From positions 1 to 64,000 of the IMG/VR virus record IMGVR_UViG_3300036770_004143: DNA of 64,000 nucleotides. The stretch is one strand, 5' to 3'. Made by a program: the position numbers and the translations under genes. Of the stretch, positions 3,752 through 44,079 are shown piece by piece (within the stretch, counting starts at the first letter, position 1; each line of letters starts with the position of its first letter). A model generated the notes under the pieces. The model saw nothing but the letters and a program-made list of their open reading frames with translations. It did not search any database and was not told where the DNA came from.

Positions 3752-3756
3752 CACAA

Positions 3757-5082
3757 TTATTTTTTAATAAAAAGTGTATTACCAACAGACAATCCACTGT
3801 CAATGGATAAGAAACCCCCACCTAATGTTGGAAATTTGTGTTTTGCTGACACTTTTATTTCCTTTCCATTTTTTGTCTTAATTCTATAAACAGGCTGTTT
3901 CTCAATAGGGAATACATAACTAATTTCTTTATATCCTTTATGTGTTAGAATATTATCTCCAACAACAACATCCTTTATTTGAATCAATCCTTTATTCTCA
4001 ATATCCACAATAGTATCTAAAGAAACACAGCGATTTCCTTGTGTACCTAACCATCCAGCAATATTTAATTCATGACACATAGCCTCAAAGTGTCTAATAA
4101 CTGATCCTTCATTCTTCCACTCATCATTACCTTGTCTATCTGGAACAACACAATCAATATAATCCAAAACAACCAAATCAAGTTTAATACCATCAGCAAT
4201 AATCTTTCTAATTTGATTCTTAATTTGATTCATTGTCAATGTGTCAGATGGCAATTTCTTTAAAATCAACTTATTTGTATGAGTTTCTTTTATATTATTA
4301 ACAGTTTCATAAACAACATCCTTATGATTTGGTAATTCATCTGGGGATATTTTTGTCCAAAGAGTAATGTGTTTTCTCTGAATAATTTTTGGATTATCTT
4401 CAAAAAAGATATGTAGAACATTATAATTGTTATTGAATGCTGTGTTTGCAACCAAGGTCAATAGAGTTGATTTACCAATACCTGGACCTGCAAATATAAT
4501 ACCAACCTCACCTTTGGCTAACCCCCCCTTTAAGAGAACGTCTATGCCCTTTACACCCATTGGTATGGGGTGTCTATAATCCTCATCCAATACACCCACC
4601 AAGTCATTAAAAACCTCAAAACCGTTTGATTCCTTAACACCAACTTGCAAGGCATATCTTAATAACTCCTCAAGTTGATCATAAGATTCAAAGTCACCCT
4701 CATTAATGACTTTCTGTGCCTTTTCCAAAACAATCTTAACTTCTTCTTGTTTGCAGAATTTAAGTGCTTTTTCTTGAACAAGTTCAACACCATCTAATGG
4801 CGCTGAACTTATTTTAGTTATAGTGTCAATCACAATCTTCAATGCCAATTCTTGTGATATTTCAGATTTGGCAATCATATTTAGTGTTTCAAAGTTTGGG
4901 GCTGCATCATATTTCTTATGATACTCCTTAATCATTTGTATGATTAACTTAAAATACTTATTCTCAAAATAAGATATTTTAATAAAATCTAATATGGCTC
5001 TTGCAAATTCCTTATCTAAAATAATCTGATTGATTAATTGCAACTGGAACGTCTGACCCAGGTAATCAAAATTCTTTGACAT
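3757..5082 (-). CDS. DnaB/gp41-like replicative helicase N-terminal fragment fused to split-intein N-part (90 aa, 3760-4029)
   Basis: Walker A AGPGIGKST, Walker B LVVLDYID, GTQGNR, then CVSLDT...SAKHKFPT...GLSVGNTLFIKK-stop. Confidence 0.92.
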   Translation of the reverse strand: MSKNFDYLGQTFQLQLINQIILDKEFARAILDFIKISYFENKYFKLIIQMIKEYHKKYDAAPNFETLNMIAKSEISQELALKIVIDTITKISSAPLDGVELVQEKALKFCKQEEVKIVLEKAQKVINEGDFESYDQLEELLRYALQVGVKESNGFEVFNDLVGVLDEDYRHPIPMGVKGIDVLLKGGLAKGEVGIIFAGPGIGKSTLLTLVANTAFNNNYNVLHIFFEDNPKIIQRKHITLWTKISPDELPNHKDVVYETVNNIKETHTNKLILKKLPSDTLTMNQIKNQIRKIIADGIKLDLVVLDYIDCVVPDRQGNDEWKNEGSVIRHFEAMCHELNIAGWLGTQGNRCVSLDTIVDIENKGLIQIKDVVVGDNILTHKGYKEISYVFPIEKQPVYRIKTKNGKEIKVSAKHKFPTLGGGFLSIDSGLSVGNTLFIKK

Positions 5083-9593: not shown

Positions 9594-12500
9594 TTACTCC
9601 AATTTTGGGTGTAAAATTAATTTTGTATAATTTGTCCACCAATATTTAATATTTAATAATTTGTTTTCATTTGAAACTATACCCCCAATTATATCATTCT
9701 CTTCAATTTTTTGATTTCCCTTGCTAAAATTGGAACTATTTTCAATTGAATCTCTAATAGTTTTTTCAGTTATTTTGTAAATATTTGCTTCTGTTTGCCC
9801 AGATTCTGCAATAAACTTAAAGCCAGTATAAGGAATTTTATTAGGGTTTCTATCTATCTTTAAACTCACAGCTATTGTATATGTATCTCCTGAATTAACC
9901 TTAACATCAAAAAATGAAATAACTGGTGCACTATCTAGTATATATAATCTCACCAAGGTATCTTCTATGGTTTTATTCATTGCATCCAAATATAATAATT
10001 CTTTTGGATTATTTGCCTCAAAAAACATATCAAGAACATATGGTAAAGTATATTCTGGTTCTGCTGGTGTTCTTACAATTTTAATATTATTATAGGTATA
10101 TTCACACACTCTATTTAATTTAGCACCCTCTGACTTATTCCTAGCACTAACATATAATTCCTTTTGGTCTTCTGTAAGTTTTGCTGGGGGTGTCAAAGCC
10201 TTTAATGATGCATTTGCATCTGCAAATTTTTTATCCAATTTGGCATAAAATTTATTCTTATATAATCTATCAAAATTTTGGGCAGCATCAAGGTTTGTAT
10301 TATTACTTAAAGCCTGATTATATAACCAATCTATAATATAAAATTTAACAAAACTTTCACTTTTGTCACCCTCCAAACTAGAAAATTTAGTCATAAAAGG
10401 AATTACATAAATACTCATAAATTGAATATATAATTCAATTGATTTGAAAATAGCAAAAGGTGTTTTTATCTTATCATTTTCATTACTAGTTGCACAAAAG
10501 TATAATGGTTGTCCTCCATTATAAGATGAAATTTCCCCCTTATTATAAGTTAACCACACATTTCCAAAATTATTATGATTTGCCTTAAAACCATCTTTTT
10601 CATAAGATGCCAAATAACTAATAAGGTATATATAGTCTGCCAATTTCTTATCTGGAACCAATGAATTTATCATTGTATGAATTTGTGTGGCTGATGAATA
10701 AACTATTAATTCTTCTGTAGTTTGTTCATATTCAGAATAACCTGAATATAAGTAGTTACTACACTCACTTGAATTTGTTTGTTTTGAACCTTGTGTTTGT
10801 GTGTTATTTGTTGCAGTAGCTTCTTCATTTTTATCATTAACAATAGATTTTGCAAAATTGCTTTCAATCTTTGTTAATAAGTTCTCATTAATACTTGTGA
10901 GGTATGTATCTGTGCTTGGAGGTGAATAAATACTTTGTCTAACACCTGTGAATGTTGTTTCAAATGAACCTGGTGCAATATTATGTGAAACTTCTGTAAT
11001 AAAATAAGGACCCCCAAACATAGGAACATGTTCCAAATTGAAATACATTGTTGGTTGTATCAATGCATTGCCCATACAGTTAATTGTTGACTTGTAACTC
11101 AAGTTCTTATACAAATTAAATAATGACACACTTTGTGTTGCCACCCCCCTATTTGATGATGAATTTCTTAAAGCCTCCTGTTGAATTAATGATTCAAGAG
11201 TTGCTGTACCACTATTCTGATCAACTTGTATGCCATAGAATATTGCTTGATTTCTAATCCCTGCATCTACCAAGAAACTAACACATTTATTTGATTGTGA
11301 CCAATCTTTCTTATTTGTCTGGTCCTCCAAGAAAGGTATCTTAGATGGTTTTAACATATCAATAGCATCATCACCATATCTAAAATCTTTTGGTCCAGCT
11401 GGGGTTGTTGACCCCCTACCAGAATATATACAAACAAGTTTTGGTCCTGATTTTCTATAATCAACATCAGAATAATTCCCCCAGACATCATTTGCTATTT
11501 CTGTTGCAGTACCAATAACTTCATTAATATCATCATTTGCTGATAATGCCCCATAAAAATTAACATAAGATGGCATTGGCAAAACATTAAAATTATTTTT
11601 AACCAAAATTCCACCAATAAAATTAAAGACAGGGGTTTTTAAGTTTGTTCTTGTTCCAATAAAAATCTTCTTTAAATCAAAAATATCAACATAATACAAA
11701 TCACCTATGTTCCTATTACCCCTATCCAAGAATATTACATCTTCAAATAATGTACGAGTTGTATATTCACTACCAGATATCCATTTATCATTTATGGCTT
11801 TAAATGTTTCATATAAATCATATTTTGAAAACTTGCTATCCAATCCTGAATTTATCTCATTAATTTCAACAATATCAATATTATTTATTTCCCTCTCCAA
11901 TAAGGATAATGTCTGATTCACATTGTCTTCCAAGAATGTATCCAATGCTTTTTGGTTATTATCCATCAGTATTAAGAATTGTTCCCTTGTAATGTTTGGA
12001 TTTTTTAATTTTTGTGTTGCATATATCTTTATTGGTTTTGCAAGTGCAATGATATTCTCTGATGAAAACTCAATATTATTATCAATAAAGAAATCTGTAA
12101 TATATGAACCAGTATTCTTATATGTCAAAGATTCAATGGTGGAGAATCCAACATGTAATCTTAATGTTTCCCAAGCAGGGGCATTTGTTAATTCTGATGA
12201 TTGAAGTGATATGTTATTTGGTAAAGTGTTTGCAACATATCCTTTGAACCTTTTCTGATTCTCTATGGTTGACCTCCCCCCTAAATGACTTATCAATGAA
12301 TTATATTCATATCTATCATATTGTGTTGGATTTCCATACTTAAACAAAACATCATAACTCAAAAACCCATCCAAAAATTCTCTAATATTTTGGAATTGAT
12401 AATCTGCTGTTTTATTGTAAAAATCAGTATCATTCAAATTACTATAATTAGATGGGACTTCCATCAAATTTCTATATAATAATTGGAAATTTCTATATGC

Positions 12501-15500
12501 TGCCACAGGATTTCCATATTCCAATCCAACCAAATTTATCTGATCTTTGTTTTCATTTATGTCATAAATTGATTTGCTAAAATCCAAAAACTCATTCTCA
12601 AATAAATTTAATGTGTCATAATCAAAAACAGAAAACATATCCTCAATTGAGGCATAATCCCCAGAACTTAAGATTGAAAATGAACTAATGTCTTTCTTTC
12701 TATTCAAATATTCTGTCGGTAAAGGCTTTTTCAAGTTTTTAAATGTAAATGAATTAAATGTATCTTGCATTGTGACATTAACAGCACCATTATGTGCAAC
12801 ATCCAATAATTCATCCAAAGAAGAATAATAAATATCTGAACTATTTTTTAAAAAATTATTATCAGTAATATTATTATTTGTTGATGGTAAAATATAATAT
12901 TTTGATGTTAAACTAAAGTTAACATCCTCACAATAATCACTAAATGTGGAACTATCATATATATTTTTTGGCACTAAAGTTGTATAACAATTAAATGTCA
13001 ATCCACTCTTTTCAAAACTAAATGATTTAAGCACTTTTAAACCCCTCTTTTCATTTACATTCAATTCATTATTTGTAAATCCAGAGAATAAATCATACCC
13101 ATTCAAGAATGCATTGTAATCATTCATCATAACTGGATAAAACCCAACATTCACATTATTATCAGATTTAAGGGATATAGTTTGATTTCCATTTATGATA
13201 TACTGGAAATTTTCATTTGCATTATAATTTGACTTATAATCAAAGTCTTTCCATACATCATCCAAAAAGTCATCCCCTGTCTTAACATAATTCTTATATC
13301 TATGCCAAATGGATCCATATTTCAATATCCAAGCATATGGTAACTTATGTAAAGCAGAGTACTTTATGAAGGTTGAAAAAACGTGTCCATTCTTCTCACT
13401 TTGCCCCCTGGTGATAAAAAAATCAGTAAGTGGGGATAAGGGTAGGCTATTCAAAAAAAGATAAGCAGAAGCAATATATGGATGTTTTTCACCTATCCTC
13501 CACTTGCTAACTCCAAGTTGGATTGCATTTGTAAAGATAGGTGTGTTAATTAATGCTCTAAATTGGTTTGATGAAAAATTATCCTGGAATATTTGCCCAT
13601 ATGTTGCCCCACCTTGTGATGCAAAAAACTTAAATGGTCTATTTGTTACAACCTGATTATATTCCTTAAAATTTGTAATCACATTCCTTTTTTGATTGAA
13701 AAGAATTGTATTCTTTGTATCAAATTTATTTGGAAATAAATTGATTAAATTATCATTAACCCATATTGGATCTGTAAAAGGATATGTGAAATTTATGCTA
13801 TTTTCAGTTGGTGCTTTCTGTATTACATCTGTAATTGTTTTGACATTACCCTCATTCAAATTATTTGAGAACTTATCTGTTGTTAATTTAAATTCACTTA
13901 TATCATATATCTTGCTTGGGGTATCTAATAAGTCACTTATATACCTTGAATTTGGTACTCCATCCAGATATTTATTATACCTTTCTGAAACACCTCCTGA
14001 CATTTCTTCCAGAAATTCCTTATAGTTATCATAATCCAACCCCCCTTCTGAAAATAATATATTCTTTAATTGTTGGATAAAAATTATGGAATTTGTCTTT
14101 AATGTATTACTTATATTCTTAAATTCATTTTCCTTTATCAATAAACCAATTCTTTTATCCTTTTCATAAATGGCTGAAAACCCTGAATGGTATGATGCTA
14201 AAACAAGTCTATCCCATAATTCATAAAAGAATTTAACATTTGTTGTTAACTCATATGGTAAAGTGGCAAAGGGGTATTCTATTGTATTTGGAACATAACT
14301 ATTCCTAATTGTCTTATCTAAATCAAGTGCATCCTTTGGGGAGGGGGTTTCCAAACGTTTGGAATAACCATTTATATATTCCTCAACAAATTCAACTTCA
14401 GGCCATTTACTATAATTAAATCCCTTTGTAGCATTAACAATAGATGGGTCTCCTGGATATATTAATTCATATTTATTTGCTTCCTTCTTATCATTTGTAT
14501 AAAACACAGAAGGCCAAGGAAATACAATTTTATCATTTTCATTATCATCACGTTGACTATTATCATCAACTGCAATTTTATCATTACCTAATACTGCATT
14601 TTTTCTATCAGTATCAAGTCTAACATTCCAGGCTGAACTATGAACATCTTCCATCAATCTAAGGAATCCTTCTGTTGTTGCCATAATTACTGCAACAACA
14701 TTTTTAATTGTTGGCTTAAACCCAATTCCTGTTTCCTTTTTCTCAATCTTTAATGCCAACTCCTCTGATAAGGCTTTTTCAAGTGCATTTAATTCATTAA
14801 TGAATTTTGATTCCATTATATTCCTTTCATTAATAAAATTTGTAATATTGAAAACTGGAGTGGTTTTTGATTCACCTGATAATGTATATTTGTAATATAT
14901 AGTACTTTCAATTCTACTACGGCAAATTTCTTCAGTTAAATTTTCAACTTCAATTGGCGAAATGGATTTGTTCTTTGATTTATAAGTCTCACACCAATTA
15001 ATATCAGGATTGGTAACATGAAACAAATCATAATTTATATTGTTAGCAATAGGTAATGTTCCATAAATTCCAAAAGTGGGATTATCATTTAATTCAGCTG
15101 TATATTTTGATATTATGGTTTTTAAATCACTTTCAACCAAAAATAACCTTCCATCCTTAATATTGTCAATCAATTCTTTTTTAACACCAAATATAACATC
15201 AGTTGCATTATTTAAAATAATTGGTCTTGTATCCAAGTATTTGTTAAACCAAGACCTAAGATTACCCCTAATTTCCTGGTAATAATTGGCAAGAAATTTC
15301 TTATACCTTTTCCCATCTGTTAACTTCTGAACATCAACCTTATTCAATGAGTTCAAGACATTCTGCTCAAACATCTCAAGTTTGTATGTTAATTCAGTTA
15401 ATGTTAATTCAGGAAAATTAGCATCAATTAAACCCTTTGATTTATAATCCTTATATACTTCTATTATCTTCTGATAACCAAGTTGGGTATTCACCTCAAA

Positions 15501-16367
15501 ATTAGTTGTATCCTCAAGTGAAACTTGAGTTTGATTATCTGTTTGAGTAATTATATTATTGACTTGAGATGCTGTTAAATTTGAAACGTTTGTAATATTT
15601 GATTGACTTATCTTATATTTTTTTGAATACATATTTGGACAAGCAATCAAATGCCCAACACTTATGTCAGATAACACATTATACTTAAATCCAAGAAACT
15701 CCAAAGTAACTGTATAATCTCCATTATTTGCATTATAAGATGCATTAAACTTCAATAAAACTAATTCATACCTAACAGCCTTTCCATAATATCCTTTAAT
15801 GGTCAAATAAAATGGGGGGTAAGGTAAATTGAAGAATGCTGCATATGGTGATTCATTTCCTAAACTAAACAATGCTCTCCCTTGAACATCTTCCATAATA
15901 ACTGTAACGGTTGGTACAAAAGATGAATTTGTCCTAATAGCAATACTCTTTATACCAAATAATGTATTATCTTCAATATTAGTAGCATAATTTAATGTAT
16001 AAGTTTCATTGTTCTCCTTTACTTGTTTGGAGTTCTGTTGATTTTTCCCTCCATTTTCAGTTAAAGAATCTTTTCCAGTAATTTCATCATAATATCCAGA
16101 TGTAAAATAATTATCTTTAGTATTTGGTTTCAAGAAATTTAATGTAGCAATATTCACATTCCTAACATTATCATTAACTGGACCCCCAACCAATAGTTTT
16201 GTTCTTGGAATCAACTTTGTTTCCAGATTGGCATACATAACAAAGTCTTCAGGTATTACTGCCCTGTCAATAACTTCCCCAGTATTTGTAATTACCTTGT
16301 TGGGGTCTATATATATAACATTCTGATAATCATATATAACATGTACATCACCTTGCTCATTTGCCAT
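9594..16367 (-). CDS. Very large virion protein, probable baseplate hub
   Basis: 2257 aa in tail module; hub-like segment MGNALIQPTMYFNL...GPYFITEVSHNI...FETTFTGVR. Confidence 0.6.
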   Translation of the reverse strand: MANEQGDVHVIYDYQNVIYIDPNKVITNTGEVIDRAVIPEDFVMYANLETKLIPRTKLLVGGPVNDNVRNVNIATLNFLKPNTKDNYFTSGYYDEITGKDSLTENGGKNQQNSKQVKENNETYTLNYATNIEDNTLFGIKSIAIRTNSSFVPTVTVIMEDVQGRALFSLGNESPYAAFFNLPYPPFYLTIKGYYGKAVRYELVLLKFNASYNANNGDYTVTLEFLGFKYNVLSDISVGHLIACPNMYSKKYKISQSNITNVSNLTASQVNNIITQTDNQTQVSLEDTTNFEVNTQLGYQKIIEVYKDYKSKGLIDANFPELTLTELTYKLEMFEQNVLNSLNKVDVQKLTDGKRYKKFLANYYQEIRGNLRSWFNKYLDTRPIILNNATDVIFGVKKELIDNIKDGRLFLVESDLKTIISKYTAELNDNPTFGIYGTLPIANNINYDLFHVTNPDINWCETYKSKNKSISPIEVENLTEEICRSRIESTIYYKYTLSGESKTTPVFNITNFINERNIMESKFINELNALEKALSEELALKIEKKETGIGFKPTIKNVVAVIMATTEGFLRLMEDVHSSAWNVRLDTDRKNAVLGNDKIAVDDNSQRDDNENDKIVFPWPSVFYTNDKKEANKYELIYPGDPSIVNATKGFNYSKWPEVEFVEEYINGYSKRLETPSPKDALDLDKTIRNSYVPNTIEYPFATLPYELTTNVKFFYELWDRLVLASYHSGFSAIYEKDKRIGLLIKENEFKNISNTLKTNSIIFIQQLKNILFSEGGLDYDNYKEFLEEMSGGVSERYNKYLDGVPNSRYISDLLDTPSKIYDISEFKLTTDKFSNNLNEGNVKTITDVIQKAPTENSINFTYPFTDPIWVNDNLINLFPNKFDTKNTILFNQKRNVITNFKEYNQVVTNRPFKFFASQGGATYGQIFQDNFSSNQFRALINTPIFTNAIQLGVSKWRIGEKHPYIASAYLFLNSLPLSPLTDFFITRGQSEKNGHVFSTFIKYSALHKLPYAWILKYGSIWHRYKNYVKTGDDFLDDVWKDFDYKSNYNANENFQYIINGNQTISLKSDNNVNVGFYPVMMNDYNAFLNGYDLFSGFTNNELNVNEKRGLKVLKSFSFEKSGLTFNCYTTLVPKNIYDSSTFSDYCEDVNFSLTSKYYILPSTNNNITDNNFLKNSSDIYYSSLDELLDVAHNGAVNVTMQDTFNSFTFKNLKKPLPTEYLNRKKDISSFSILSSGDYASIEDMFSVFDYDTLNLFENEFLDFSKSIYDINENKDQINLVGLEYGNPVAAYRNFQLLYRNLMEVPSNYSNLNDTDFYNKTADYQFQNIREFLDGFLSYDVLFKYGNPTQYDRYEYNSLISHLGGRSTIENQKRFKGYVANTLPNNISLQSSELTNAPAWETLRLHVGFSTIESLTYKNTGSYITDFFIDNNIEFSSENIIALAKPIKIYATQKLKNPNITREQFLILMDNNQKALDTFLEDNVNQTLSLLEREINNIDIVEINEINSGLDSKFSKYDLYETFKAINDKWISGSEYTTRTLFEDVIFLDRGNRNIGDLYYVDIFDLKKIFIGTRTNLKTPVFNFIGGILVKNNFNVLPMPSYVNFYGALSANDDINEVIGTATEIANDVWGNYSDVDYRKSGPKLVCIYSGRGSTTPAGPKDFRYGDDAIDMLKPSKIPFLEDQTNKKDWSQSNKCVSFLVDAGIRNQAIFYGIQVDQNSGTATLESLIQQEALRNSSSNRGVATQSVSLFNLYKNLSYKSTINCMGNALIQPTMYFNLEHVPMFGGPYFITEVSHNIAPGSFETTFTGVRQSIYSPPSTDTYLTSINENLLTKIESNFAKSIVNDKNEEATATNNTQTQGSKQTNSSECSNYLYSGYSEYEQTTEELIVYSSATQIHTMINSLVPDKKLADYIYLISYLASYEKDGFKANHNNFGNVWLTYNKGEISSYNGGQPLYFCATSNENDKIKTPFAIFKSIELYIQFMSIYVIPFMTKFSSLEGDKSESFVKFYIIDWLYNQALSNNTNLDAAQNFDRLYKNKFYAKLDKKFADANASLKALTPPAKLTEDQKELYVSARNKSEGAKLNRVCEYTYNNIKIVRTPAEPEYTLPYVLDMFFEANNPKELLYLDAMNKTIEDTLVRLYILDSAPVISFFDVKVNSGDTYTIAVSLKIDRNPNKIPYTGFKFIAESGQTEANIYKITEKTIRDSIENSSNFSKGNQKIEENDIIGGIVSNENKLLNIKYWWTNYTKLILHPKLE

Positions 16368-16368
16368 A

Positions 16369-16409
16369 TTGAACTACCCACAAACTATAGATTTGCGGGA
16401 TTCTGAAAT
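16369..16409 (-). ncRNA. 3' part of TnpB omegaRNA / IS200-IS605 right end
   Basis: On the - strand: hairpin CCCGCAAA-TCTATAG-TTTGTGGG followed by TAGTTCAA; the predicted guide begins TATGGCAAATGAG. Confidence 0.6.
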
Positions 16410-17585
16410 TTAAGTATTCAGAATTTTGGAAGTTTCATTGGTTGTGCCAATTAAAGTTGGTCTTATTTCACCTCCACTTCTGTAATCGTCAGTCCCTGAC
16501 GATATAAGTTTATATCCTTCATTAAGGATGTTTTTACTAGCATTTAAATCTCTATCTAATTTTGTATGACAAGATGGACAAGTCCATTCCCTCATATCTA
16601 ATTTTAGATTTTGATTAATATATCCACAACAGTTGCAAGTTTTTGAACTAGGGAAGAACCTATCAATTTTGACAATCTGCTTATCATTCCATTCTGCTTT
16701 ATAGGTTAAAAGTTCTATGAACTTTGACCAACTAACATCAGAAATGTGTTTTGCAAGTTTATGATTCTTTATCATTCCTTTAATATTTAAATCTTCCAAT
16801 ATGATTGTATCATATTTTTTGATTAACTCTGTGGAAACTTTGTGCAAATTATCTAAACGAGAATTGGCTATCTTCTTATAAATAGTTGCAACTTTTAATT
16901 TTTGTTTTTGGTATCTATTACTACCTTTTATTTTTCTAGTTAAATGTTGTTGATTTTGTTTTAATTTTCTTGCATAAGTTTTAGTATATCTATTATTTTT
17001 ATATATAAACCCTTCAGATGTGACTAAAAAATCTTTAATACCTAAATCAATCCCAATTGTTTTTCCTGTTTTAGGTGTAGCAGTATGTGTTGTTTCTACC
17101 AAGATTGAAACAAAATATTCATTTGTTGGTGTTTTTGATATGGTGCATTGTTTAATTTTACCAGTGAAACTTTGGGATAAAATAAAATCAATAGGTTCTT
17201 TAAATTTTGGTATTCTTAATTTTCCATTTTCTATTTTAACAAATTGTGGAATTTTAAAACTATTTTTTACATGTTTGGACTTAAATCTTGGAAATTTGGT
17301 TCTTTTCTTAAAGAATCCATTATAAGCATCATCAAGATTTTTTAATGATGTTTGTAATGACTGTGAATTAATTTCATTTAACCAGGAATATTGTTCTTGT
17401 CTCTTTAATTCAGTTAATGATTTTGCATTGTCGTAGTAATTAATAGTTTGTTTGTTTGTCTCATATTCCTGTTTTCTTTCATTAAGAAAATAATTATAAA
17501 TAAACCTTATAGCACCAAAATGCTTATTTAAAAGCACTTTTTGGTCTTCATTAGGAATGATTTTATATTTGTATGTTTTTAACAT
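16410..17585 (-). mobile_element. tnpB: Solo TnpB RNA-guided endonuclease (IS200/IS605 family)
   Basis: HTH N-terminus (KTYKYKIIP...FG..RFIYN), RuvC GIDLG / LEDL / DRDLNA, Zn finger CNCCG...CPSC; no tnpA nearby. Confidence 0.92.
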
Positions 17586-17605
17586 CTTTTTAAAATTCAA
17601 TATAT

Positions 17606-17929
17606 TTATTTTCCATAATAAAAGAAATAATTTTCTACTGCATTTTTATAATCTAATAAAGATGTCTCCAATGGAAAGGGTATTTTTAGCATAGCCCCAT
17701 CATATATGTTATTTTCAAGACCACCATGCTCTGGATTTGCTGCCAAAATAAGCCAGCCAAAGAAGGGGGTTTGATAATATTGCTGTGACACCTTATCCAA
17801 TCTGCTAACATTTTTCTTATAAAAGAAAACATTATCACTTGACTTGGATGGTATCTTGACAAAAGGTACAACTTTCTGCTCACCATTAAATGTGAATTGT
17901 GAATATCTATTATAATATTTTAAACTCAT
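17606..17929 (-). CDS. Baseplate wedge protein (gp53/LysM-like)
   Basis: RLDKVSQQYY...WLILAANP...LKIP pattern; position in tail module. Confidence 0.65.
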   Translation of the reverse strand: MSLKYYNRYSQFTFNGEQKVVPFVKIPSKSSDNVFFYKKNVSRLDKVSQQYYQTPFFGWLILAANPEHGGLENNIYDGAMLKIPFPLETSLLDYKNAVENYFFYYGK

Positions 17930-20900
17930 CTCATTAATTTATTTTTAACTAGAATAAATCCATCACTATTTTTATTCCATGTAGTTTTATTGCTATCATA
18001 ATTATTAACACCATTCAAAGTTAATATTGCATTTTTAGTGTCATTATCAGGAGATTCAACTATCTCATATTGACTTATATAACCTACTGTACCATTTGGC
18101 TTAATCTCTTTTAACTCAACAAGCATATCATTTATATATTTAGTTAAGTTTGTTAAGAACTTAATAGTAACTTCTTTATGTTTATTATTATATCTAATCA
18201 ACTTCTCACCCCAATAACTCTTAAATATCTTTGATATCTTTTCATTGTTTGAAATGAAGTTTTTATCAGGATTAATTGATTTTAAAAGAATTTGTTTTTC
18301 AAAATTTTCTAAACCATTTTTATCTCTAAATGCTCCATATAATAATAAATAGAGTAAACTATCTTGATCACTTGAAAATATATCCTTTGGATTATCTATA
18401 TTTATTTTTAAATACGGCAAGAAATTTGTTTCAATACGTTGTGCAATTCCAGATAATACATCCTGTATTCCAGTTAATGAATTAAGTAATTTATAAACAA
18501 AGAAATTTCCAGTTTTATCAACATACCCATCATAACCAAAATATGAATTGTGAGTTGAAATCACAAATAATGCTTTACTTAAAACCTTTTGATATTTCTC
18601 CTGAGCATCAAGAATTGCTTTTGTTAGAATGTTAATATTGTTATTAACCTTAACCATTTCATTATCAATATATAACTGATAATTATTTGACACATCAAAC
18701 TTTATAGTCTTTTCAGAACTAAATTCTTCATTTATTTGTTCAATAAATCCATCAGAATTAGTCTTTATATTATCTTTAATTATTTTTACATAATCATCTA
18801 TTGTTTTTTGATAATCTGTTGGAACACCCAATAACTTAAATTCACCTCCTGTTGTTGGGTTGTAAACCCCATTAACATTATTCAATGATTTTAATATCAA
18901 AGAAACCAATTCAATATTATATGCTTTTGAATTTTCTTGAATAACTGAATTAATTGTATTAACATAAGCAGTGGAGGCTTCAACTAGTTCTGTTGCCAAA
19001 GTAATATAATTCAATGTGGTTGCTGTAGTGTTAATTTCACCTATTGTCTTATATGCATTTACAACTTTAATATCATCAAAATTCTCAGTCTTACCTTTTT
19101 CCTTTTCTCTTATAAAATCCAATATTTTCTCATCCATATCATCCAAACTATTGTCAGTCTTATCAGCCCTTGCATCATAAACCTCTGTGTTTGCATAATA
19201 ATTAAATGACAAAGCATTTTGTAATTTATCAACAGCATTACTCAATCCACTTGCACCAACAAACTTGAAACTCAAAGTAACCTTTGCAATCATAGGTTGA
19301 AATCCAATCCCTTCAGGATTTATATCCCAATGTAATGGATCATAACTAATAGCTAAATTATCAGGTATAATCTTTGTATGAAAGAAATCCCCTACCCTCA
19401 ATACCAAAACTGGAGGTACGCCAAATGCTGTGTTTCTTGCATCCTTAAACTCCCTCACACCACCTTCCCTTATGGTAGGTATGGTATCCCCAGGTCTAAC
19501 ACATTGTTGAAGAAATGTCAATCTACCATTCAAACCTTCTGGGGTTGTGGAATGGAAAGCTGGACTAAAATATTTTAATTTTTCCTTTATGTTATTATAT
19601 ATGAATGGGTTTGTTTCCTCTATGGTCTCAAAATAATCACATTCTGTTAAAAGTTTTTGTAAAACCCTTTTTGATACATTCTTATATAATTTATTTTCTG
19701 TTGTTGTAATTTCTTTTTCAATCTTTTGTTTTGTTACCTTAACTTCAGATTCATTTGTTACCAATGTTGGTTCAACCTTTGGTGCAACACTTTTTTGAAT
19801 GGCATTAACATCTTTTATGGCAACTCTTCTACAAGCCATAGCTTGAACACTTGTTATAGCATTTTCTGTAAAAGCACTACAATTTGCAACAGAAATAGAT
19901 GATTTACCAGTTGTTGAATTGGCAACAACTCCTGTTTCCTCACCAAGAATATTTGTCTTTATGGTAAAGTTTTTTGACTTTATATTGTTTGTTAAATAAG
20001 TTGTAACACTACTACTACGTCTTTGACTTAATGCTTTGTTATAACTAATAGATGCTGGTTTTGATGCAGATGAGTTAAGTGTTAATTCAATAGTATTCCC
20101 CTCATTCTGTGCAAGAAACTCATTACATTCAGTTATGAAGTTATTAAGATATGCAAAATTATCTTTTACATGTAAATCCATAAAACTTTTTAATTGTGCT
20201 TGAGTATATAATGTTGATGCAGTATATGAATTAAATGCACTAACATAATCAGCATTACTTGATTTTGGAACATCATTATCAAAATAAAATGCATACTCCT
20301 TATACTTGTCAAATCTTGTATCTTTTTTATCTGGGGGTGTATCAACTTGTGATGGATTTATTGGGTCAACATTTGTAACCACTGTTCTCTTGATATAACT
20401 AACATCATCTTTAATAGATGTGCTTTCCTTAACAATTTTTTGAATTTCCTCAAGTTCAGATAATGTCATTGTGTTATATATCTTTGCTAAATCATATATG
20501 TCATATTTCAAACATCCAGCAAAAAAAGATGATAATATACCATTAATAACCTCTGAATTATTCTCTTTCTCTAAAATCCTATTTGTAATTAAATTTAACA
20601 CAGATGGATGATCCACAACAATTGAAAACTCCAATGACCCTGTTCTTGTTGTATTTTTATAGGTGAAAACAGGCTCTGGTCTTCCCAAAAACTCATTTGA
20701 ATTCCAAGTGGATGATGATGAATCTGTAACCTTTAAATCATATGGTGGAAACCACATTAACCTTCCCCCATTTGGACCTTTCTCACATTCTGGCAAATCC
20801 AAAAACTTATTTGTTGTTCTCCATGCCAAATTCTCAATTGATAACATATATTTCTTTGAATCATTTCCCTTCCTTGGGGCAATGCTCAAATCATATGTTT

Positions 20901-22602
20901 TATTGATAACTGAACCTTTTAATCTCCTTCCTTCATTTGTAATACCACTTGTCTTTTGCAAACGGTCATATGACATATAAGGTGAATCCTTTGTAAATAA
21001 TCTACAATATTCTTGGAATGAACCCCCAACCAAATTCTGTGGGTCTTGATATTTATATGCCTTAACTCTTGAACCTTTTGTTATTTCCTTATACCCATCA
21101 TTAAAAACCTTGCTAACTTGATCCATAGCATTACCCACATGTTTTAACCTATTTGCCCCATTTGGCTGTGAGTTAATTATCCTTTGTGTATCATCCAATA
21201 TCGAACCATCCTTAAAATCATAATTGGTTGATTCTGTTCCATCAAAAGTGGTTTGTTTTGTTCCATTATCCCCAAATATCTCACCACCTTTCCCTGCACT
21301 CTTTCCTGCATTATTCTTATATTTTGGTGAAACCCATGTTAAACCCCCTTCAATACCACCACCATCAATATCACTTTTTCCATTAAATCCAATGGCTGGA
21401 TTGAAGTTTTCACCCTCATATACCTTTGAAACCTCTGTTGAACTATATACACTCTTTTGAATGCGCCTTCCAAATTGGTCAATTGGTAAATCATCTTCTG
21501 GTGAAAGAATGTCAATAATGTCCAAATTATCATTTCCTACATAATAGGTACTCTTGTTATTTGTGAATAAATCCAAAAATGAACCTATTATGCCACTTCT
21601 TTCATAATTTGGCTTGTATAAATTCTTATTAATATTTTTATATAAGACTGACCGTTGACCAGCTCCCATATTATCATAAAATAATTGTGAACCTGTTTTC
21701 TTCTGTTGGAATAATCCACCAAGAAAACCCTTATCTCCTTTACCATTTAAACTTATTGATTCATCAAAATAACTTCCAATAATAGTTGGAAATGGTAATT
21801 CACCACCAACAAACTCCAATGCCAATTGTGCTGCACCAACAAGCAAATTATTTGGCTTTGTTATACTCCAGTTTGGTTGAATAATTGGATTTGGTCCTAT
21901 TATGAGATTATATACATCAAAGGGGTCATTCAAACTTGCAATAGTCTGGTCAAACTTCTTTATGATGTCATATCTTGTTGTTAACTTTGCAACCCTTTCA
22001 TTAAAATAATTTGTTAAAGTCTTTGCACCCAATCTTGTAATATAAGAATCCGCAGATAAATTCGATTTGGTTTCAGCAGTATCCGTAAGTATGCCAAATG
22101 CTGTATATTTAGAGGGTTTGAAACTATTAACACCTACACCCCAATAATATAATATCCCCTTCTTTGCTAAATTTGCATCAAACCACTCATCATCATTCTC
22201 AATATAAATTGCTGAATCGGTTAAATCATCTTTTGTTGTGTAAAAATTCTCAAACAAATTTTTATTTAAACTTTCTCTATTAATCTTTAATGCAACAGAA
22301 TTTTTTATACTATATTCACCATAATTTGTTTTTTTATTATTTAATACATTTACATCTTGTGTTTGAATATAACCACCAACTCTACCATATTGGTTTTTGC
22401 CATATAACTCATTTGCATATATTGGCTGGTCAATTAATTTGTCAGGAGAATCCACAACATTTAATATCTTTGAAAAAGGTGATACCTCATAGTTAAATGG
22501 GGGACTATTACCAAGAGGAGTTTTCTTGTATGGAACTAAATTTTTTGTTATTAAAAACTTCCTAAAATTCTCACTATTTCCAAAATCTAAGGGACTTCTC
22601 AT
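17926..22602 (-). CDS. Large baseplate / tube-initiator-like protein with an inserted OmpA-like domain
   Basis: W...LGRPEPVFTYKNTTR tube-initiator-like segment; FYFDND...SAS...YNKALSQRR...RRV OmpA-like motif; follows tape measure. Confidence 0.55.
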   Translation of the reverse strand: MRSPLDFGNSENFRKFLITKNLVPYKKTPLGNSPPFNYEVSPFSKILNVVDSPDKLIDQPIYANELYGKNQYGRVGGYIQTQDVNVLNNKKTNYGEYSIKNSVALKINRESLNKNLFENFYTTKDDLTDSAIYIENDDEWFDANLAKKGILYYWGVGVNSFKPSKYTAFGILTDTAETKSNLSADSYITRLGAKTLTNYFNERVAKLTTRYDIIKKFDQTIASLNDPFDVYNLIIGPNPIIQPNWSITKPNNLLVGAAQLALEFVGGELPFPTIIGSYFDESISLNGKGDKGFLGGLFQQKKTGSQLFYDNMGAGQRSVLYKNINKNLYKPNYERSGIIGSFLDLFTNNKSTYYVGNDNLDIIDILSPEDDLPIDQFGRRIQKSVYSSTEVSKVYEGENFNPAIGFNGKSDIDGGGIEGGLTWVSPKYKNNAGKSAGKGGEIFGDNGTKQTTFDGTESTNYDFKDGSILDDTQRIINSQPNGANRLKHVGNAMDQVSKVFNDGYKEITKGSRVKAYKYQDPQNLVGGSFQEYCRLFTKDSPYMSYDRLQKTSGITNEGRRLKGSVINKTYDLSIAPRKGNDSKKYMLSIENLAWRTTNKFLDLPECEKGPNGGRLMWFPPYDLKVTDSSSSTWNSNEFLGRPEPVFTYKNTTRTGSLEFSIVVDHPSVLNLITNRILEKENNSEVINGILSSFFAGCLKYDIYDLAKIYNTMTLSELEEIQKIVKESTSIKDDVSYIKRTVVTNVDPINPSQVDTPPDKKDTRFDKYKEYAFYFDNDVPKSSNADYVSAFNSYTASTLYTQAQLKSFMDLHVKDNFAYLNNFITECNEFLAQNEGNTIELTLNSSASKPASISYNKALSQRRSSSVTTYLTNNIKSKNFTIKTNILGEETGVVANSTTGKSSISVANCSAFTENAITSVQAMACRRVAIKDVNAIQKSVAPKVEPTLVTNESEVKVTKQKIEKEITTTENKLYKNVSKRVLQKLLTECDYFETIEETNPFIYNNIKEKLKYFSPAFHSTTPEGLNGRLTFLQQCVRPGDTIPTIREGGVREFKDARNTAFGVPPVLVLRVGDFFHTKIIPDNLAISYDPLHWDINPEGIGFQPMIAKVTLSFKFVGASGLSNAVDKLQNALSFNYYANTEVYDARADKTDNSLDDMDEKILDFIREKEKGKTENFDDIKVVNAYKTIGEINTTATTLNYITLATELVEASTAYVNTINSVIQENSKAYNIELVSLILKSLNNVNGVYNPTTGGEFKLLGVPTDYQKTIDDYVKIIKDNIKTNSDGFIEQINEEFSSEKTIKFDVSNNYQLYIDNEMVKVNNNINILTKAILDAQEKYQKVLSKALFVISTHNSYFGYDGYVDKTGNFFVYKLLNSLTGIQDVLSGIAQRIETNFLPYLKINIDNPKDIFSSDQDSLLYLLLYGAFRDKNGLENFEKQILLKSINPDKNFISNNEKISKIFKSYWGEKLIRYNNKHKEVTIKFLTNLTKYINDMLVELKEIKPNGTVGYISQYEIVESPDNDTKNAILTLNGVNNYDSNKTTWNKNSDGFILVKNKLMR

Positions 22603-24504: not shown

Positions 24505-24660
24505 ATTATTGTTGTTAACATCCTCTGTCCATTTGCTTATCAAAAATTTCCGAAGAAATATTGGCATAATCAAGAACTCAGAATATGAAACATGTAAAAG
24601 TTTTTTTAAATAATAAAATTCTGTTGATTGTGATAACCTATAATCCGAAGAAAGGGCGAA
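24493..24660 (-). CDS. Tail assembly chaperone C-terminal extension, probably reached by +1 frameshift
   Basis: Open in the +1 frame overlapping the chaperone 3' end; SYSEFLIMPIFLRKFLI resembles gp51/GT-type extensions; no convincing start of its own. Confidence 0.55.
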   Translation of the reverse strand, partial: FALSSDYRLSQSTEFYYLKKLLHVSYSEFLIMPIFLRKFLISKWTEDVNNNNNKG

Positions 24661-25387
24661 AGAACTCCACCCCAAACCCAGCATTCACTGTGGTCACATC
24701 TCCTGATGGGGTCTTGATGTCTTTTTTCATATTAAGTTTAGGTTCATTTTCAACCAAATATCTACGAACAAATTTTGAATCAGCAATTGGCATATTCTCC
24801 ACATATTTAACAATATTTGTCTTATCAACATCACCATTAATTTCAACAATCTCCCTGGATAACCTTAATGTAACTCTTGGTGCTACCCTAGTAGGGGGAT
24901 AATTATCAATTATTTCATTTACCTCCAATATTTCACCATATGTCAAAGGTTTTAGTTTAACCACATCACCACTCTTAGGTAATGTAACAGTATATGTTCC
25001 ATCATCATTTGGTTTATTGCCAGGTTCAATACTTAACTCACTCAAATCAACAGTTGCTTTAAAAGATTTCCCTGTTTTTGGGTCAGTAACTGAAAGTTCA
25101 ATATCCGAACCAAAAGAAGTATTTCTCAAAAAGATTAAAATTGCTTCTATATCACTTTCAATCATATCCTCTGGTCTTATATCATATTCATATATTTTGT
25201 TCTTTAAAAGTTGTAATGTAAAATTCTTGCTATTACCTAACAATAGATTCTCATCAGCTGCTGTTAAATAACCAACCTTAACTGCTTTCTTCTTGTTTTT
25301 GTAAAATATGCCACCAGAAGGTAATTGAACCACATCGTGGGGTAAATCAAAATTTGATTGCCCATATTCTTTAGATTTATCTTCCAT
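24638..25387 (-). CDS. Tail/baseplate assembly chaperone (gp26-like)
   Basis: VVQLPSGG..Y, LTAADE, D..AILIFLR..SFG, LKPLTYG, ends VEFFRPFF; between tube and tape measure. Confidence 0.7.
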   Translation of the reverse strand: MEDKSKEYGQSNFDLPHDVVQLPSGGIFYKNKKKAVKVGYLTAADENLLLGNSKNFTLQLLKNKIYEYDIRPEDMIESDIEAILIFLRNTSFGSDIELSVTDPKTGKSFKATVDLSELSIEPGNKPNDDGTYTVTLPKSGDVVKLKPLTYGEILEVNEIIDNYPPTRVAPRVTLRLSREIVEINGDVDKTNIVKYVENMPIADSKFVRRYLVENEPKLNMKKDIKTPSGDVTTVNAGFGVEFFRPFFGL

Positions 25388-25504: not shown

Positions 25505-25993
25505 TTAATAAACTAATATACACCTATCTGGTTGAATACTAACACTAATACCTGCAATATTGTCTGAACTATAGCTTAAACTTCCAAAGTCAACACTAGT
25601 CAATATACAACCTTCAAGTAACCATTTTTCAATAACAACCCCTGTTGGGTCAAGCATTTCCAATGTTAAATTCTGTTTATAACCACTTGCATAACCCATC
25701 CTGCCTGTAACTGATTCAGCATGTAATCTAACCCATTCCATTAAGGCTTGTGAAGCTGATGGACCAATTGGATCCCTAAACTTAACACTAATAGGATCCC
25801 ATTTAAATCTTCCTGACACAAATGTTGATGTATTCAAGAACTGTATTTCTGTTGAACCTATGCTAATCTTGGGTCTTGCTGCTGTTTCAACAAACCATTC
25901 ATTTATACCCATACTTGCTGGAAACCTCAAGATGAACCTATTTTCCCTTTTTGGTTCGTAAGGTAACGGCATTTTCATTAATAAGTCCGCCAT
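25505..25993 (-). CDS. Tail tube protein (gp19-like)
   Basis: EPKRENRF, GRFKWDPISV, YK....LEMLDPTG...EKWLLEG...VDFGSLSY. Confidence 0.85.
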   Translation of the reverse strand: MADLLMKMPLPYEPKRENRFILRFPASMGINEWFVETAARPKISIGSTEIQFLNTSTFVSGRFKWDPISVKFRDPIGPSASQALMEWVRLHAESVTGRMGYASGYKQNLTLEMLDPTGVVIEKWLLEGCILTSVDFGSLSYSSDNIAGISVSIQPDRCILVY

Positions 25994-28073: not shown

Positions 28074-31000
28074 TTATATATCTTCAAATGAAGCACCAGT
28101 AGGTGTTATCACAAATTCAAGACTTATGAATTCTAATGACCTTGTAGGTTTAATATAAATTTTACCACTCATTGTATTCCTATCAATATCCTCTGGGTCA
28201 TTTGAAACTGTAACACGGAAATCGGTAAGACCCCTATCCCTTCTAATACCATCTAGGATTGGATTTACTGTATCCAAAAACTGTTGGCGGACTATCTGGT
28301 CATTTTGTTCAAAAAGTAGCCTCACAGCAACCGCAGAGATTAATTTACGTGCTTGTAGTAATAACCTACGAACATTAATTCTATTTAATGCTGATTCTCT
28401 AACTTGCAAGGTTTTATTTCCCCAAATTACAGTATTCACATCAGAGAATGTTGCAATTGGATTTATTCTTCCTTGATATAAAGTATCTCTATCATCTTGA
28501 GTTAATTTTAATCTTGCTTTAACTGAATTAACTAAACCCCTATTATAACCTGCTGATGCAAACCAAGGGAAAGCCACATTGTCAGTTAATGCCAAGTTTC
28601 TACAAACTTCTGCTGTTGGTGGAATATATACTTGTGTATTATTCACTTGGTCTCTAACCAAAATCCAAGGATAATAAGTTGCTGTATAATTTGAATCAAT
28701 GTTTGTTTCCTCCAATGATACAATGGATTCTTGGGGGTAAATAACATCATTCACATTTGTTGTTAAAAGATTTGCATCAGGTGTTGTAACAATATAAATG
28801 GAGTCTGCTCTATCTGATTCAACCATATCAATCGCATTTTCAACCAAGTTGCTATTATTTACATAATCTATGCCTGGGGTAACAAACACATTTATGTTTG
28901 TTGATTCTGGATTTTGGAATGTTAAAATTCCTTTATAATATGCATAATAATCTGTTGTTGCAAAATCAATAGTACCATCACCTTCTGTTATCTCCTTAAA
29001 CGTTCCTTGACCAGTTGCAGCAGCATATTTGCCAGGAATAGATAATGCTCCCCTCATATAGTCTGTTCCACCAATTTGATAAGAATCCCCATTTGTTCTT
29101 TTTTCAGAATAAACATCCCAACCATCAAATCCACCTTCAAACATCAATGTGAACTTTCTTGAATATAGGTAATAGTATGGGCTTGTATTGTCCTCTGGTT
29201 CAACATTAAAACTTCCTGTACCAACCTCAAAAGCCGTTTGACCACTTGTTGTGTAAGCATTTGCAATGGTAACAACTGTTGCACCTGAATCCATATGGAA
29301 ACCTTTTGTAACCACATTCCATTCTGATCCATCTGCAATAATGCTATTTGGATTTTGTTTTCCCTTATAATTTAATAATGAATTATCATATCCATAACTT
29401 GTTGAGAAACCAAGATATGTCCTTTTAACATTGTCAGCAGGAACAGCATTTGATGATGCAAACGGTTCATTATATACCACCTCATTATTGAAATAATATT
29501 TTGTCTTATATAAAACAGTAGGTGATAATTTTGTTCCATACTTTCTGTGGGGATAACCCATAAAACCACATGGGATTGCATCAGATGGGAATTCATCTCC
29601 CATTTCAAGCATAATATATTTTGAAATTAGATTATATTTACCATCACTTGTTCCAATCTTCTTACCAATGAAAGAATTTTGTGTTTCATCCAATGTGCAA
29701 TTTGTGTATTTTTCTAATACAACTGGTGCAGTATCTGAGTCATAAAAACTTCTAACCAATACATCAAATGTTCTATTTTTGAATGACATATTAATGATTG
29801 AAATCTTCACTTCTGTATTTGCATTATTTCCATCAGAAATTGAAATAAATTTGAATAAATTATAAACCTTATTTCCTCTCAATTCAGAAACCACAAATGG
29901 TGTCTTTGGTGATTGATATTTTTCAAGATACCATCCAATTGAGGTTGAAGGGTTTGTTGTTGTTCTTGCTGATGGTAGATAGGTTAAATTGGTTTTCAAT
30001 CCTCTAATATACCCAAGTTTATATGCTTGGTTCAATAAGGTTGGATAATGCTCTTCAACAAAAATTGGAACATCATTTCTATCTTTTCCAAAATTATCTG
30101 TTCCCAACACATTTGTTAAGTAATTTGAATTTGTTGGTCTTAATGAAACATTAAATGTAAAGTTTGAATTGCCTGTTGTATTCCCACTTAAAACAAAGTT
30201 TCCAAATGGATCACCACTCATTGTTGTGCTATTTGCTCCATCAATTGTTAAAGTATTACCTGTTAAGGAATAAATTTGACCATGATTGGTGGATGAATAA
30301 CTTGTGATACCTCTTGACCTAATGGTTGCAACAACCATATCACTATAACCTGTATAGGCTGTTCCAGAGAATACATAAGTGTTTCCTGTAACTGTTCCTG
30401 TAAATGACCCAGCAACTTGATTCCAAGCAGATGTGTTATAATAGAATGAAAATCCATTATAAATATTAGTGTCTGGTTCATTTGTGAATGTTGCATAATT
30501 CCAAACATCATTTTCATCAACTGGTGTTCCATTTGAATTTAATGCAACTGGCGTTCCAAAGTAGTTATAACTTGTTAATCCTGATTGTGTTGAACCTGTG
30601 ATTGTGTTATATGCTGATACTGGGATTGAACCATAAGTTGATGTCTGACCTGTTAAGGTGTTTGAACTTGCCACATTATTTGCAAATGCTTTTAAATCAT
30701 CATAGAAAGTTGATACTACGCCTGTGCTATTTGTATAAGTGTCAGATGAGAATGTTGCAAGAGTCATTCCATTTGGATAGCTTCCTGAAATACTAAATGT
30801 CCCAGTTGTACCTGTTGTTCCTGTAAATGAAATGGAAAATGTTGAACTACTACCACTTAAACCAATAGTTGAATTATTTACATTTGCAATGGTTGTTATT
30901 GACCATGATGGACCAGCATCATAACCAGATAATCCAAGAACTCTTGTAACATACATTTGATTTGATTGCTGTAAATATGATTTTGCAATATATGCAGATT

Positions 31001-41239: not shown

Positions 41240-41242
41240 TAT

Positions 41243-44045: not shown

Positions 44046-44053
44046 TATCTTAA

Positions 44054-44070: not shown

Positions 44071-44079
44071 TAATCTTTT

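What the first reader, a model, noticed from the sequence alone, without database searches (positions are those of the whole stretch)
16350..17605. Stripped-down solo TnpB inside the baseplate operon, with a guide matching the start of the hub gene
Seen: intact RuvC D/E/D residues and no tnpA. Only 20 nt separate the upstream stop from the tnpB ATG, leaving little room for a left-end hairpin. The right end (hairpin + TTCAA at 16369) lies 1 nt before the hub ATG, so the guide would be TATGGCAAATGAGCAAGG. Established: TnpB guides derive from the right flank and cut the empty allele. Inference: a transposition-dead TnpB acting as an RNA-guided homing endonuclease against co-infecting relatives; omegaRNA processing could also affect hub translation.
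Basis: partly seen in the sequence, partly recalled or inferred. Interest (0 to 1): 0.6.

Follow-up and report, generated by a model that had tools for sequence, protein, structure and literature searches.

The report
Left-end-less TnpB homing cassette in phage
An intact RNA-guided nuclease gene (TnpB) with its guide RNA, but without the transposon end needed to jump, sits between two tail genes of a large uncultured phage, and its guide matches the same site in related phages that lack it, so it probably spreads like a homing endonuclease.

Summary
There is a 391-aa TnpB (16410-17585, minus strand) with RuvC D180/E264/D346 and the zinc-finger cysteines intact. It lies 20 nt after the stop of the upstream gene. 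A conserved omegaRNA ends in a hairpin plus TTCAA at 16369, 1 nt before the next ATG. No tnpA and no left-end hairpin exist in the 64 kb.

Relatives add four results.
- Sister elements carry a 133-146 nt left end with a hairpin; this copy keeps only a 20-nt remnant.
- Three independent empty sites place TTTAT directly 5' of the guide match, so the TAM is TTTAT.
- 23 fetched TnpB-less alleles carry TTTAT plus a perfect 20/20 guide match in the native overlap of the two tail genes.
- A third "scar" allele keeps the element's footprint but has TCCAA before the target.

The identical cassette sits in two different flank haplotypes, each shared with TnpB-less phages.

Best reading (about 0.55): a TnpA-independent, RNA-guided homing cassette derived from an IS200/IS605 element. 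Cleavage, RNA expression and biased inheritance are not shown. The occupied allele is rare. The "hub" label is unverified.

The parts
16410..17585 (-). tnpB coding sequence, 391 aa. RuvC residues D180 (17048-17046), E264 (16796-16794), D346 (16550-16548); zinc-finger Cys317/320/336/339.
16369..16505 (-). Putative omegaRNA scaffold (about 137 nt). It overlaps the 3' end of tnpB and runs to the right end. It has four helices, including the terminal hairpin at 16399-16377; the 5' limit is approximate.
   Evidence: Covariation: 18 of 28 pairs change on both sides, 91.6% of cells paired against 16-41% when partners are slid. RNAalifold gives 12 of 21 compensatory pairs. Fold z = -3.0. Weak Rfam BTnc005 hit.
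16369..16373 (-). Right-end terminus TTCAA. It occupies the position where a TAM would have to be, which protects the occupied allele.
   Evidence: Family-wide GTAGTTCA+N terminus
16349..16368 (-). Guide-encoding right flank (TATGGCAAATGAGCAAGGTG). It covers the first codons of the 2257-aa gene plus 1 nt upstream.
17586..17605 (-). 20-nt remnant of the tnpB 5' leader. It resembles the last ~23 nt before the ATG in relative L047. The left-end hairpin and the promoter-like box are missing.
17606..17617 (-). Recoded duplicate of the first 12 nt of the target (TATGGAAAATAA). It supplies the last codons and the stop of the 107-aa gene. It differs from the guide at positions 6 and 11, both silent for that gene.
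17618..17622 (-). TTTAT, the inferred TAM and original insertion target. In TnpB-less alleles it lies directly 5' of the guide match.
17606..17929 (-). Upstream gene p107, a LysM-like small baseplate-type protein. In relatives its end overlaps the start of the next gene (ATGGCAAATGA).
9594..16367 (-). Its function is not established.

Best explanation
This is the nuclease half of an IS200/IS605-family element: tnpB, the omegaRNA and the right end.

Proposed history (inferred):
1. The element entered 3' of TTTAT, in the 11-nt overlap between a LysM-like baseplate gene and the next tail gene of a ~270-kb uncultured phage.
2. It then lost its left end (hairpin and own promoter box).
3. It gained a 12-nt recoded copy of the target that restores the upstream gene's native end.

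Proposed mechanism (inferred):
1. TnpA cannot move it.
2. It is transcribed with the tail operon.
3. TnpB would cut its own mRNA into an omegaRNA whose guide is the first ~16-20 nt after the right end.
4. In a cell co-infected by a relative with the native overlap allele (TTTAT + perfect target), the RNP would cut the start of that tail gene.
5. The phage's own recombination proteins (UvsX/RecA-like, gp32-like) would repair the break from the occupied genome and copy the cassette.

The occupied allele is immune, because TTCAA lies before the target and the left copy has seed mismatches. A deletion derivative, the scar allele with TCCAA before the target, is a resistant allele.

Shown here: the anatomy, the TAM, the target distribution, conservation of protein and RNA, and the same cassette in two haplotypes.
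Inferred: expression, cleavage and homing.
For: - Protein intact and close to an active enzyme: ISDra2 TnpB, E = 8e-77, D/E/D and zinc finger conserved.
- Purifying selection in the phage clade: dN/dS 0.15-0.26, catalytic residues kept also in the other left-end-less copies L045 and L050.
- omegaRNA structure supported by covariation.
- Right-end limit fixed by about 27 loci.
- TAM: three independent empty sites have TTTAT immediately 5' of the guide match. These are the window's site, L048 against L292-294, and L045 against L397/L403-406. TTTAT occurs at 0.005 per position.
- Targets exist: 23 fetched alleles carry TTTAT + 20/20 match; occupied alleles have TTCAA and 7 scar alleles have TCCAA there.
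- Left end absent: relatives have 133-146 nt with a hairpin, and nothing like it occurs in the window. No tnpA.
- Spread: the cassette differs at 0 of 1435 nt between the window and L395. Their flanks differ by 1.7% (left) and about 0.45% (right), and each matches a different TnpB-less haplotype.
- The three allele types come from related sample series.
- The phage encodes RecA/UvsX-like and gp32-like proteins.
- Precedent: a TnpB gene drive independent of TnpA in plasmids (bioRxiv 10.1101/2025.02.20.638934), and 'non-restorative homing' proposed for phages (PMC13565253).
Against: - No expression, cleavage or inheritance data.
- The occupied allele is rare: the exact protein occurs in 4 contigs, always at this site. 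Susceptible alleles are many, which is not what an efficient drive predicts.
- The population is highly mosaic, so ordinary recombination could also place one insert in two haplotypes.
- Contigs are metagenome assemblies and may be consensus or chimeric.
- The TAM rests on three sites, not on an assay.
- The 12-nt duplication has no demonstrated mechanism.
- The cassette has lost the promoter-like box that relatives keep. Its right-end hairpin lies 9 nt before the next ATG, which may cost the phage.
Confidence: 0.55

Rival explanations
1. Stranded, functionally neutral IS remnant. The element inserted once, lost its left end, is inherited vertically and is shuffled among haplotypes by the ordinary, very frequent recombination of these phages. 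TnpB does nothing for its spread and will decay or be deleted, as the scar allele shows.
For: The occupied allele is rare and scar alleles are more common. Flanks are mosaic everywhere. The own promoter box is lost. No variation within the cassette means no test of selection in this lineage.
Against: The ORF, catalytic residues, zinc finger and all omegaRNA helices are intact. There are 0 differences in 1435 nt against 0.45-1.7% in the adjacent flanks, which indicates a young, moving insert rather than an old passenger. A perfect TAM+target persists in relatives. Two other left-end-less copies in other phages also keep intact genes.
Confidence: 0.25
2. Retained for the phage's benefit rather than for its own spread. 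It would be an RNA-guided weapon that destroys co-infecting relatives (interference competition without gene conversion), or a regulator or processor of the tail-operon mRNA next to the downstream start codon.
For: The target is the start of a large tail gene of competitors. The right-end hairpin and the TnpB binding site lie 1-9 nt before the ATG. An intron endonuclease of jumbo phage PhiPA3 acts in competition (PMC11620839). TnpB-derived TldR proteins regulate genes (PMC13565253).
Against: The RuvC site is intact, so it is not a TldR-type dead repressor. With close homology on both sides and phage recombinases present, a cut would usually be repaired from the occupied genome, which is homing. 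Nothing here tests regulation.
Confidence: 0.15
3. Still a transposon. A cryptic left end lies inside the upstream gene, and a TnpA encoded elsewhere in the genome or host moves it.
For: Only 64 kb of about 270 kb was inspected. TnpA genes exist next to some more distant relatives (L061-63, L077).
Against: The upstream gene's 3' end is the same in 50+ TnpB-less alleles, so it is not element DNA. The only left-end-like sequence in the window is the right-end hairpin itself. The exact protein is found only at this one site.
Confidence: 0.04

Closest known systems
ISDra2 TnpB-omegaRNA (IS200/IS605; PDB 8BF8, 8EXA, 8H1J)
   Same: Same domain order, RuvC D/E/D and zinc finger (E = 8e-77). The guide RNA overlaps the 3' end of the gene and the right end, and the guide is the right flank. 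A 5-nt T-rich TAM equals the insertion target.
   Different: The TAM inferred here is TTTAT, not TTGAT. There is no left end, no tnpA and a single copy. It sits inside a phage tail operon. The TAM is followed by a 12-nt recoded target duplicate.
TnpB gene drive of IS605 in multicopy plasmids (Mears et al., bioRxiv 10.1101/2025.02.20.638934); 'transposon non-restorative homing' (review PMC13565253)
   Same: The proposed mechanism is the same: TnpB cuts the orthologous empty site on a co-resident replicon, and repair copies the element without TnpA.
   Different: That case is an experimental system with a complete IS in plasmids. This case is a natural, left-end-less cassette in a virulent-type large phage, with susceptible, occupied and resistant alleles seen in metagenomes and no experiment.
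Free-standing homing endonuclease genes of T4-like phages (SegB/F/G, MobE; PMC2330249, PMC2790892)
   Same: A nuclease gene lies between two conserved genes. The target is in the neighbouring gene of relatives that lack it, and the gene's own allele is protected by sequence differences. Spread is expected in co-infection through phage recombination.
   Different: Recognition is by a guide RNA plus TAM instead of by protein. Self/non-self discrimination comes from presence or absence of the insert next to the TAM.
TldR (TnpB-like nuclease-dead repressors, phage-encoded)
   Same: A TnpB relative in a phage that has lost transposon function and keeps a fixed guide.
   Different: TldRs lack RuvC catalytic residues and target promoters. 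This protein keeps D/E/D, and its guide is its own right flank.

Membership tests
TnpB of IS200/IS605 | HTH + RuvC (OrfB_IS605) + zinc-ribbon domain order | tested here: met
   Pfam E = 7e-17, 2e-26 and 4e-24; phrog_506 E = 2e-132
TnpB of IS200/IS605 | RuvC catalytic D-E-D and CxxC...CxxC | tested here: met
   D180/E264/D346 align to ISDra2 D191/E278/D361
TnpB of IS200/IS605 | Structured omegaRNA overlapping the 3' end of the gene and ending at the right end | tested here: met
   Covariation in four helices; conserved terminus GTAGTTCA+N. RNA expression was not tested.
TnpB of IS200/IS605 | TAM equals the insertion target 5' of the element and lies 5' of the guide match in empty sites | tested here: met
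   TTTAT at three independent empty sites
IS200/IS605 transposon (mobile unit) | Left-end subterminal hairpin | tested here: not met
   Only 20 nt (32 nt from the TAM) lie before the ATG, against 133-146 nt with a hairpin in relatives. No left-end-like sequence in the window.
IS200/IS605 transposon (mobile unit) | Y1 TnpA partner in cis or in the genome | tested here: inconclusive
   None in the 64-kb window. The rest of the ~270-kb genome and the host were not examined.
IS200/IS605 transposon (mobile unit) | No target-site duplication | tested here: not met
   A 12-nt (10/12 identical) copy of the target follows the TAM
Free-standing homing endonuclease gene | Target present at the homologous locus of relatives that lack the gene, and absent or altered in the carrier | tested here: met
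   23 alleles with TAM + 20/20 match. The carrier has TTCAA before the target and seed mismatches in the left copy.
Free-standing homing endonuclease gene | Evidence of lateral spread with short co-converted flanks | tested here: inconclusive
   The identical cassette lies in two flank haplotypes, with differences starting 48 nt to the left and 137 nt to the right. Ordinary recombination is not excluded.
Free-standing homing endonuclease gene | Cleavage of the target and super-Mendelian inheritance in mixed infection | not testable with these tools
   Needs an assay
TldR | Loss of RuvC catalytic residues | tested here: not met
   D/E/D intact

The most novel reading that the evidence does not exclude
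A natural RNA-guided gene drive in a phage population, caught with all three allele classes: susceptible overlap allele, driving cassette, and resistant scar. In this reading the 12-nt target duplicate next to the TAM is the footprint of an imprecise homing event that kept the TAM-proximal stub left by TnpB's TAM-distal cut. That would show how a transposon's nuclease module becomes a free-standing homing gene once its left end and TnpA are gone.
Probability: 0.3. Interest if true: 0.8.

Novelty: new variant of a known kind. Interest (0 to 1): 0.62.

Why it matters
TnpB is thought to have evolved to keep transposons from being lost. A TnpA-independent drive has so far been shown only in engineered plasmids and merely proposed for phages. 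This locus offers a natural test case: defined TAM, guide, target, self-protection and a resistant allele. It would let one ask whether RNA-guided nucleases act as homing genes in viruses and how such drives are stopped. It also gives a compact ISDra2-like TnpB with a probable TTTAT TAM.

Tried and rejected
It returned 120 unrelated hits and none with the locus.
- Megablast of the region against GenBank phages gave no match. The DNA polymerase is only about 25% identical to Salinibacter phages and cyanophages, so the host is unknown. Bacteroidota is suggested only by gene content and by TnpB relatives in Algoriphagus and Ichthyobacteriaceae.
- Rfam has nothing at gathering score, only a weak BTnc005 hit.
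- The 2257-aa and 1558-aa proteins have no PDB sequence match.
- The N-terminal 400 aa of the 2257-aa protein folded at pLDDT 43.5 and was not searched.
- The empty site for L044 is not a simple insertion, because a 29-nt leader is missing.
- The flanks of L043 and L047 gave no close TnpB-less relatives.
- L046's relative L288 is also occupied.
- 'Scar allele is ancestral and TnpB inserted into it' was rejected. It would require the flank to mimic by chance both the element's leader (ATATAT before TGAATTT, as in L047) and the conserved right-end terminus. It also leaves the TTTAT-target adjacency in overlap alleles unexplained.
- A sigma-70 promoter or terminator inside the locus was rejected: there are fewer promoter-like sites than in shuffles and no terminator-like sites.
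Full report
**What is there.** On the minus strand the gene order is:
- a 1558-aa gene (17926-22602);
- a 107-aa gene, p107 (17606-17929);
- tnpB (16410-17585);
- a 2257-aa gene (9594-16367).

The tnpB product has the three Pfam domains of IS200/IS605 TnpB. It matches the solved ISDra2 TnpB at E = 8e-77. D180, E264 and D346 align to the catalytic D191, E278 and D361, and both CxxC pairs are present. Twenty nucleotides separate the p107 stop from the tnpB ATG. After the tnpB stop come a hairpin (16399-16377), then TAG, then TTCAA (16373-16369), one T, and the ATG of the next gene. The window holds no second TnpB, no copy of the ends and no TnpA (best tblastn E = 0.3 with three TnpA queries from related loci).

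**Right end, guide and RNA.** In about 27 related loci from viral contigs and bacterial genomes, similarity stops at hairpin + GTAGTTCA plus one base (C most often, then T, then A). The right end here is therefore TTCAA, and the guide begins at 16368 (TATGGCAAATGAGCAAGG...). This sequence occurs once in the window. The 137 nt before the right end fold better than shuffles (z = -3.0). Four helices are supported by covariation:
- 18 of 28 pairs change on both sides;
- 91.6% of cells are paired, against 16-41% when the partners are slid;
- 0 of 500 shuffles reach the observed score.

Rfam has no family at threshold. A weak hit to Bacteroides sRNA BTnc005 covers the 3' half.

**The left end is really missing.** Sister copies with 74-83% protein identity (L043, L044, L046, L047, L048) have 133-146 nt between a TTTAT and the ATG. 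That stretch contains a hairpin of the same type as the right-end hairpin and a promoter-like ATTTAT box about 26 nt before the ATG. The window has neither. Its 20 nt resemble only the last part of that leader, best seen against L047. The only left-end-like sequence in 64 kb is the right-end hairpin itself. The 3' end of p107 is not hidden element DNA, because it is the same in more than 50 alleles without TnpB. Two other phage copies, L045 and L050, also lack the hairpin but keep intact genes.

**Empty sites and the TAM.** Forty viral loci encode p107. Three are the same occupied site. In 36 others the p107 stop overlaps the start of the next gene (ATGGCAAATGA) and no TnpB is present. In these the 18-20 nt guide sequence is preceded directly by TTTAT.

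Two further elements gave true empty sites.
- L048 against L292-294...AATTTAT | CAAATATACTAC..., the same sequence that follows the L048 right end.
- L045 against L397 and L403-406...GTATTTAT | ATATAAAAAGTTG..., against ATAGAAAAAGTTG after the L045 right end.

TTTAT occurs at 0.005 per position in the window, so three exact adjacencies are not chance. The TAM of this clade is inferred to be TTTAT, a type already reported for IS200/IS605-derived elements (PMC13565253). The original insertion was therefore a canonical one, 3' of TTTAT in the gene overlap.

**The duplication and the scar.** In the occupied allele, TTTAT is followed by TATGGAAAATAA. This is a 10/12 copy of the start of the target, and it supplies the last codons and stop of p107. 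Its two differences (guide positions 6 and 11) are silent for p107. After the copy come the 20-nt leader remnant and tnpB. IS200/IS605 elements make no target duplication, so this is secondary. I consider it an illegitimate recombination or imprecise homing product, kept because it restores the native end of p107. This is inference.

A third allele, the scar, has the same recoded copy plus ATATAT and CCAAT, then the ATG, with no TnpB (L004). It is best explained as a deletion between the TGAAT and TCAAT repeats at the two ends of the cassette plus one T-to-C change. The reverse order of events would need several coincidences (see Tried and rejected). In the scar the target is preceded by TCCAA, and in the occupied allele by TTCAA, so neither has a TAM.

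**Population picture.** The exact p107 protein of the window is encoded in many public contigs with all three junctions. Over all fetched loci, 23 have TTTAT plus a 20/20 match, 7 are scars and 5 are occupied, with some redundancy. The exact TnpB protein is on record in 4 contigs, always at this site. One of them, L395 from an ENA assembly, shows no difference from the window across 1435 nt. That span runs from 48 nt left of the junction to 137 nt right of it and includes the whole cassette. The adjacent flanks differ by 1.7% (left) and about 0.45% (right). The window's flanks match the overlap alleles L371 and L372. Those of L395 match the L380 group.

One identical cassette thus sits in two backgrounds that both also exist without it. 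This is what homing predicts, but the population is mosaic throughout, so ordinary recombination is not excluded. Within the phage clade TnpB is under purifying selection (dN/dS 0.15-0.26), with the catalytic residues and cysteines invariant.

**Context.** The surrounding genes form a contractile-tail module:
- sheath (28074-31223);
- gp19-like tube (25505-25993);
- a T4_baseplate-family protein (24638-25387).

The p107 model (pLDDT 71.5) is LysM-like. Its best, weak Foldseek hits are LysM baseplate proteins of P1, A-1(L), phi812 and P2 gpX. 'Baseplate operon' is therefore fair. 'Hub' for the 2257-aa gene is only a guess from synteny. A promoter-like box precedes the 1558-aa gene, and no terminator-like site lies within the locus, so tnpB is probably co-transcribed with the tail genes. 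The phage encodes RecA/UvsX-like, gp32-like and 5'-3' exonuclease proteins just downstream, which is the machinery homing would use. The source contig is about 270 kb. No cultured relative was found.

**Mechanism and rivals.** The most likely reading (0.55) is that the cassette is a TnpA-independent, RNA-guided homing element. It would cut TTTAT + target in co-infecting overlap-allele relatives and be copied in by recombination, with the scar acting as a resistant allele.

Against this reading stand the lack of any functional data and the rarity of the occupied allele. The main rival (0.25) is a stranded, neutral remnant shuffled by ordinary recombination. A phage-beneficial weapon or regulator is possible (0.15) and overlaps with the homing reading. 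Continued TnpA-dependent mobility is very unlikely (0.04).

**Comparison with what is known.** The protein and RNA are ordinary members of the ISDra2-like TnpB family. A TnpB-driven, TnpA-independent gene drive has been shown in plasmids (bioRxiv 10.1101/2025.02.20.638934) and suggested in theory for phages (PMC13565253). Papers found in the library mention phage-borne TnpB genes without this analysis. The library is incomplete, so prior description elsewhere cannot be excluded.

The new elements are:
- loss of the left end;
- the recoded target duplicate that uncouples two overlapping tail genes;
- the three-allele polymorphism.

Noticed in passing
window 40173-44102 (-): Eight tandem paralogous genes (133-195 aa) with 60-nt (20-aa) internal repeats and near-identical sequences at the gene junctions.
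   Followed up: no
window 32493-36485 (-), repeats 34315-35960: A 1330-aa ORF holds about 60 copies of an 18-nt (6-aa) repeat. Local GC is 0.40-0.42 and GC skew reaches +0.70, far from the rest of the window.
   Followed up: partly
window 2467-5082 (-): A DnaB-like helicase has a weak intein-splicing hit at its C-terminus. The adjacent 410-aa gene ends in a DUF559/MTES_1575 endonuclease domain. This may be another mobile nuclease locus.
   Followed up: no
window 49892-56985: A TonB-dependent-receptor-like outer-membrane beta-barrel, a SAM synthetase and a GlcNAc transferase are encoded by the phage.
   Followed up: no
window, upstream of e.g. 22602, 24445, 27030, 31223, 37989, 44080, 44809: A promoter-like box (T/G)ATATTTATAT lies 18-29 nt before many start codons. 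It contains TTTAT, the inferred TAM. Relatives L044 and L045 are inserted exactly after such a box, so these elements land between promoters and genes.
   Followed up: partly
window 16371-16481 (-): Weak Rfam match (E = 0.2) to Bacteroides sRNA BTnc005, including the terminal hairpin. BTnc005 may itself be a TnpB omegaRNA.
   Followed up: no
L048:2855-2860 and 4218-4223: The left end of this sister element starts with CAAATA, the same 6 nt as its right flank and target. This is a short duplicate like the 12-nt one in the window, and could be chance or the same process.
   Followed up: partly
L044:2862-4220: The right end abuts the ATG of the next gene, and the 29-nt leader found in all TnpB-less relatives is missing, so this insertion is not simple either.
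   Followed up: partly
L048:1458-2831 (-): The left neighbour of that element is a Cys-rich 457-aa gene with 197 hits in viral contigs, often two copies per contig. It is possibly a multicopy mobile nuclease-type gene.
   Followed up: no
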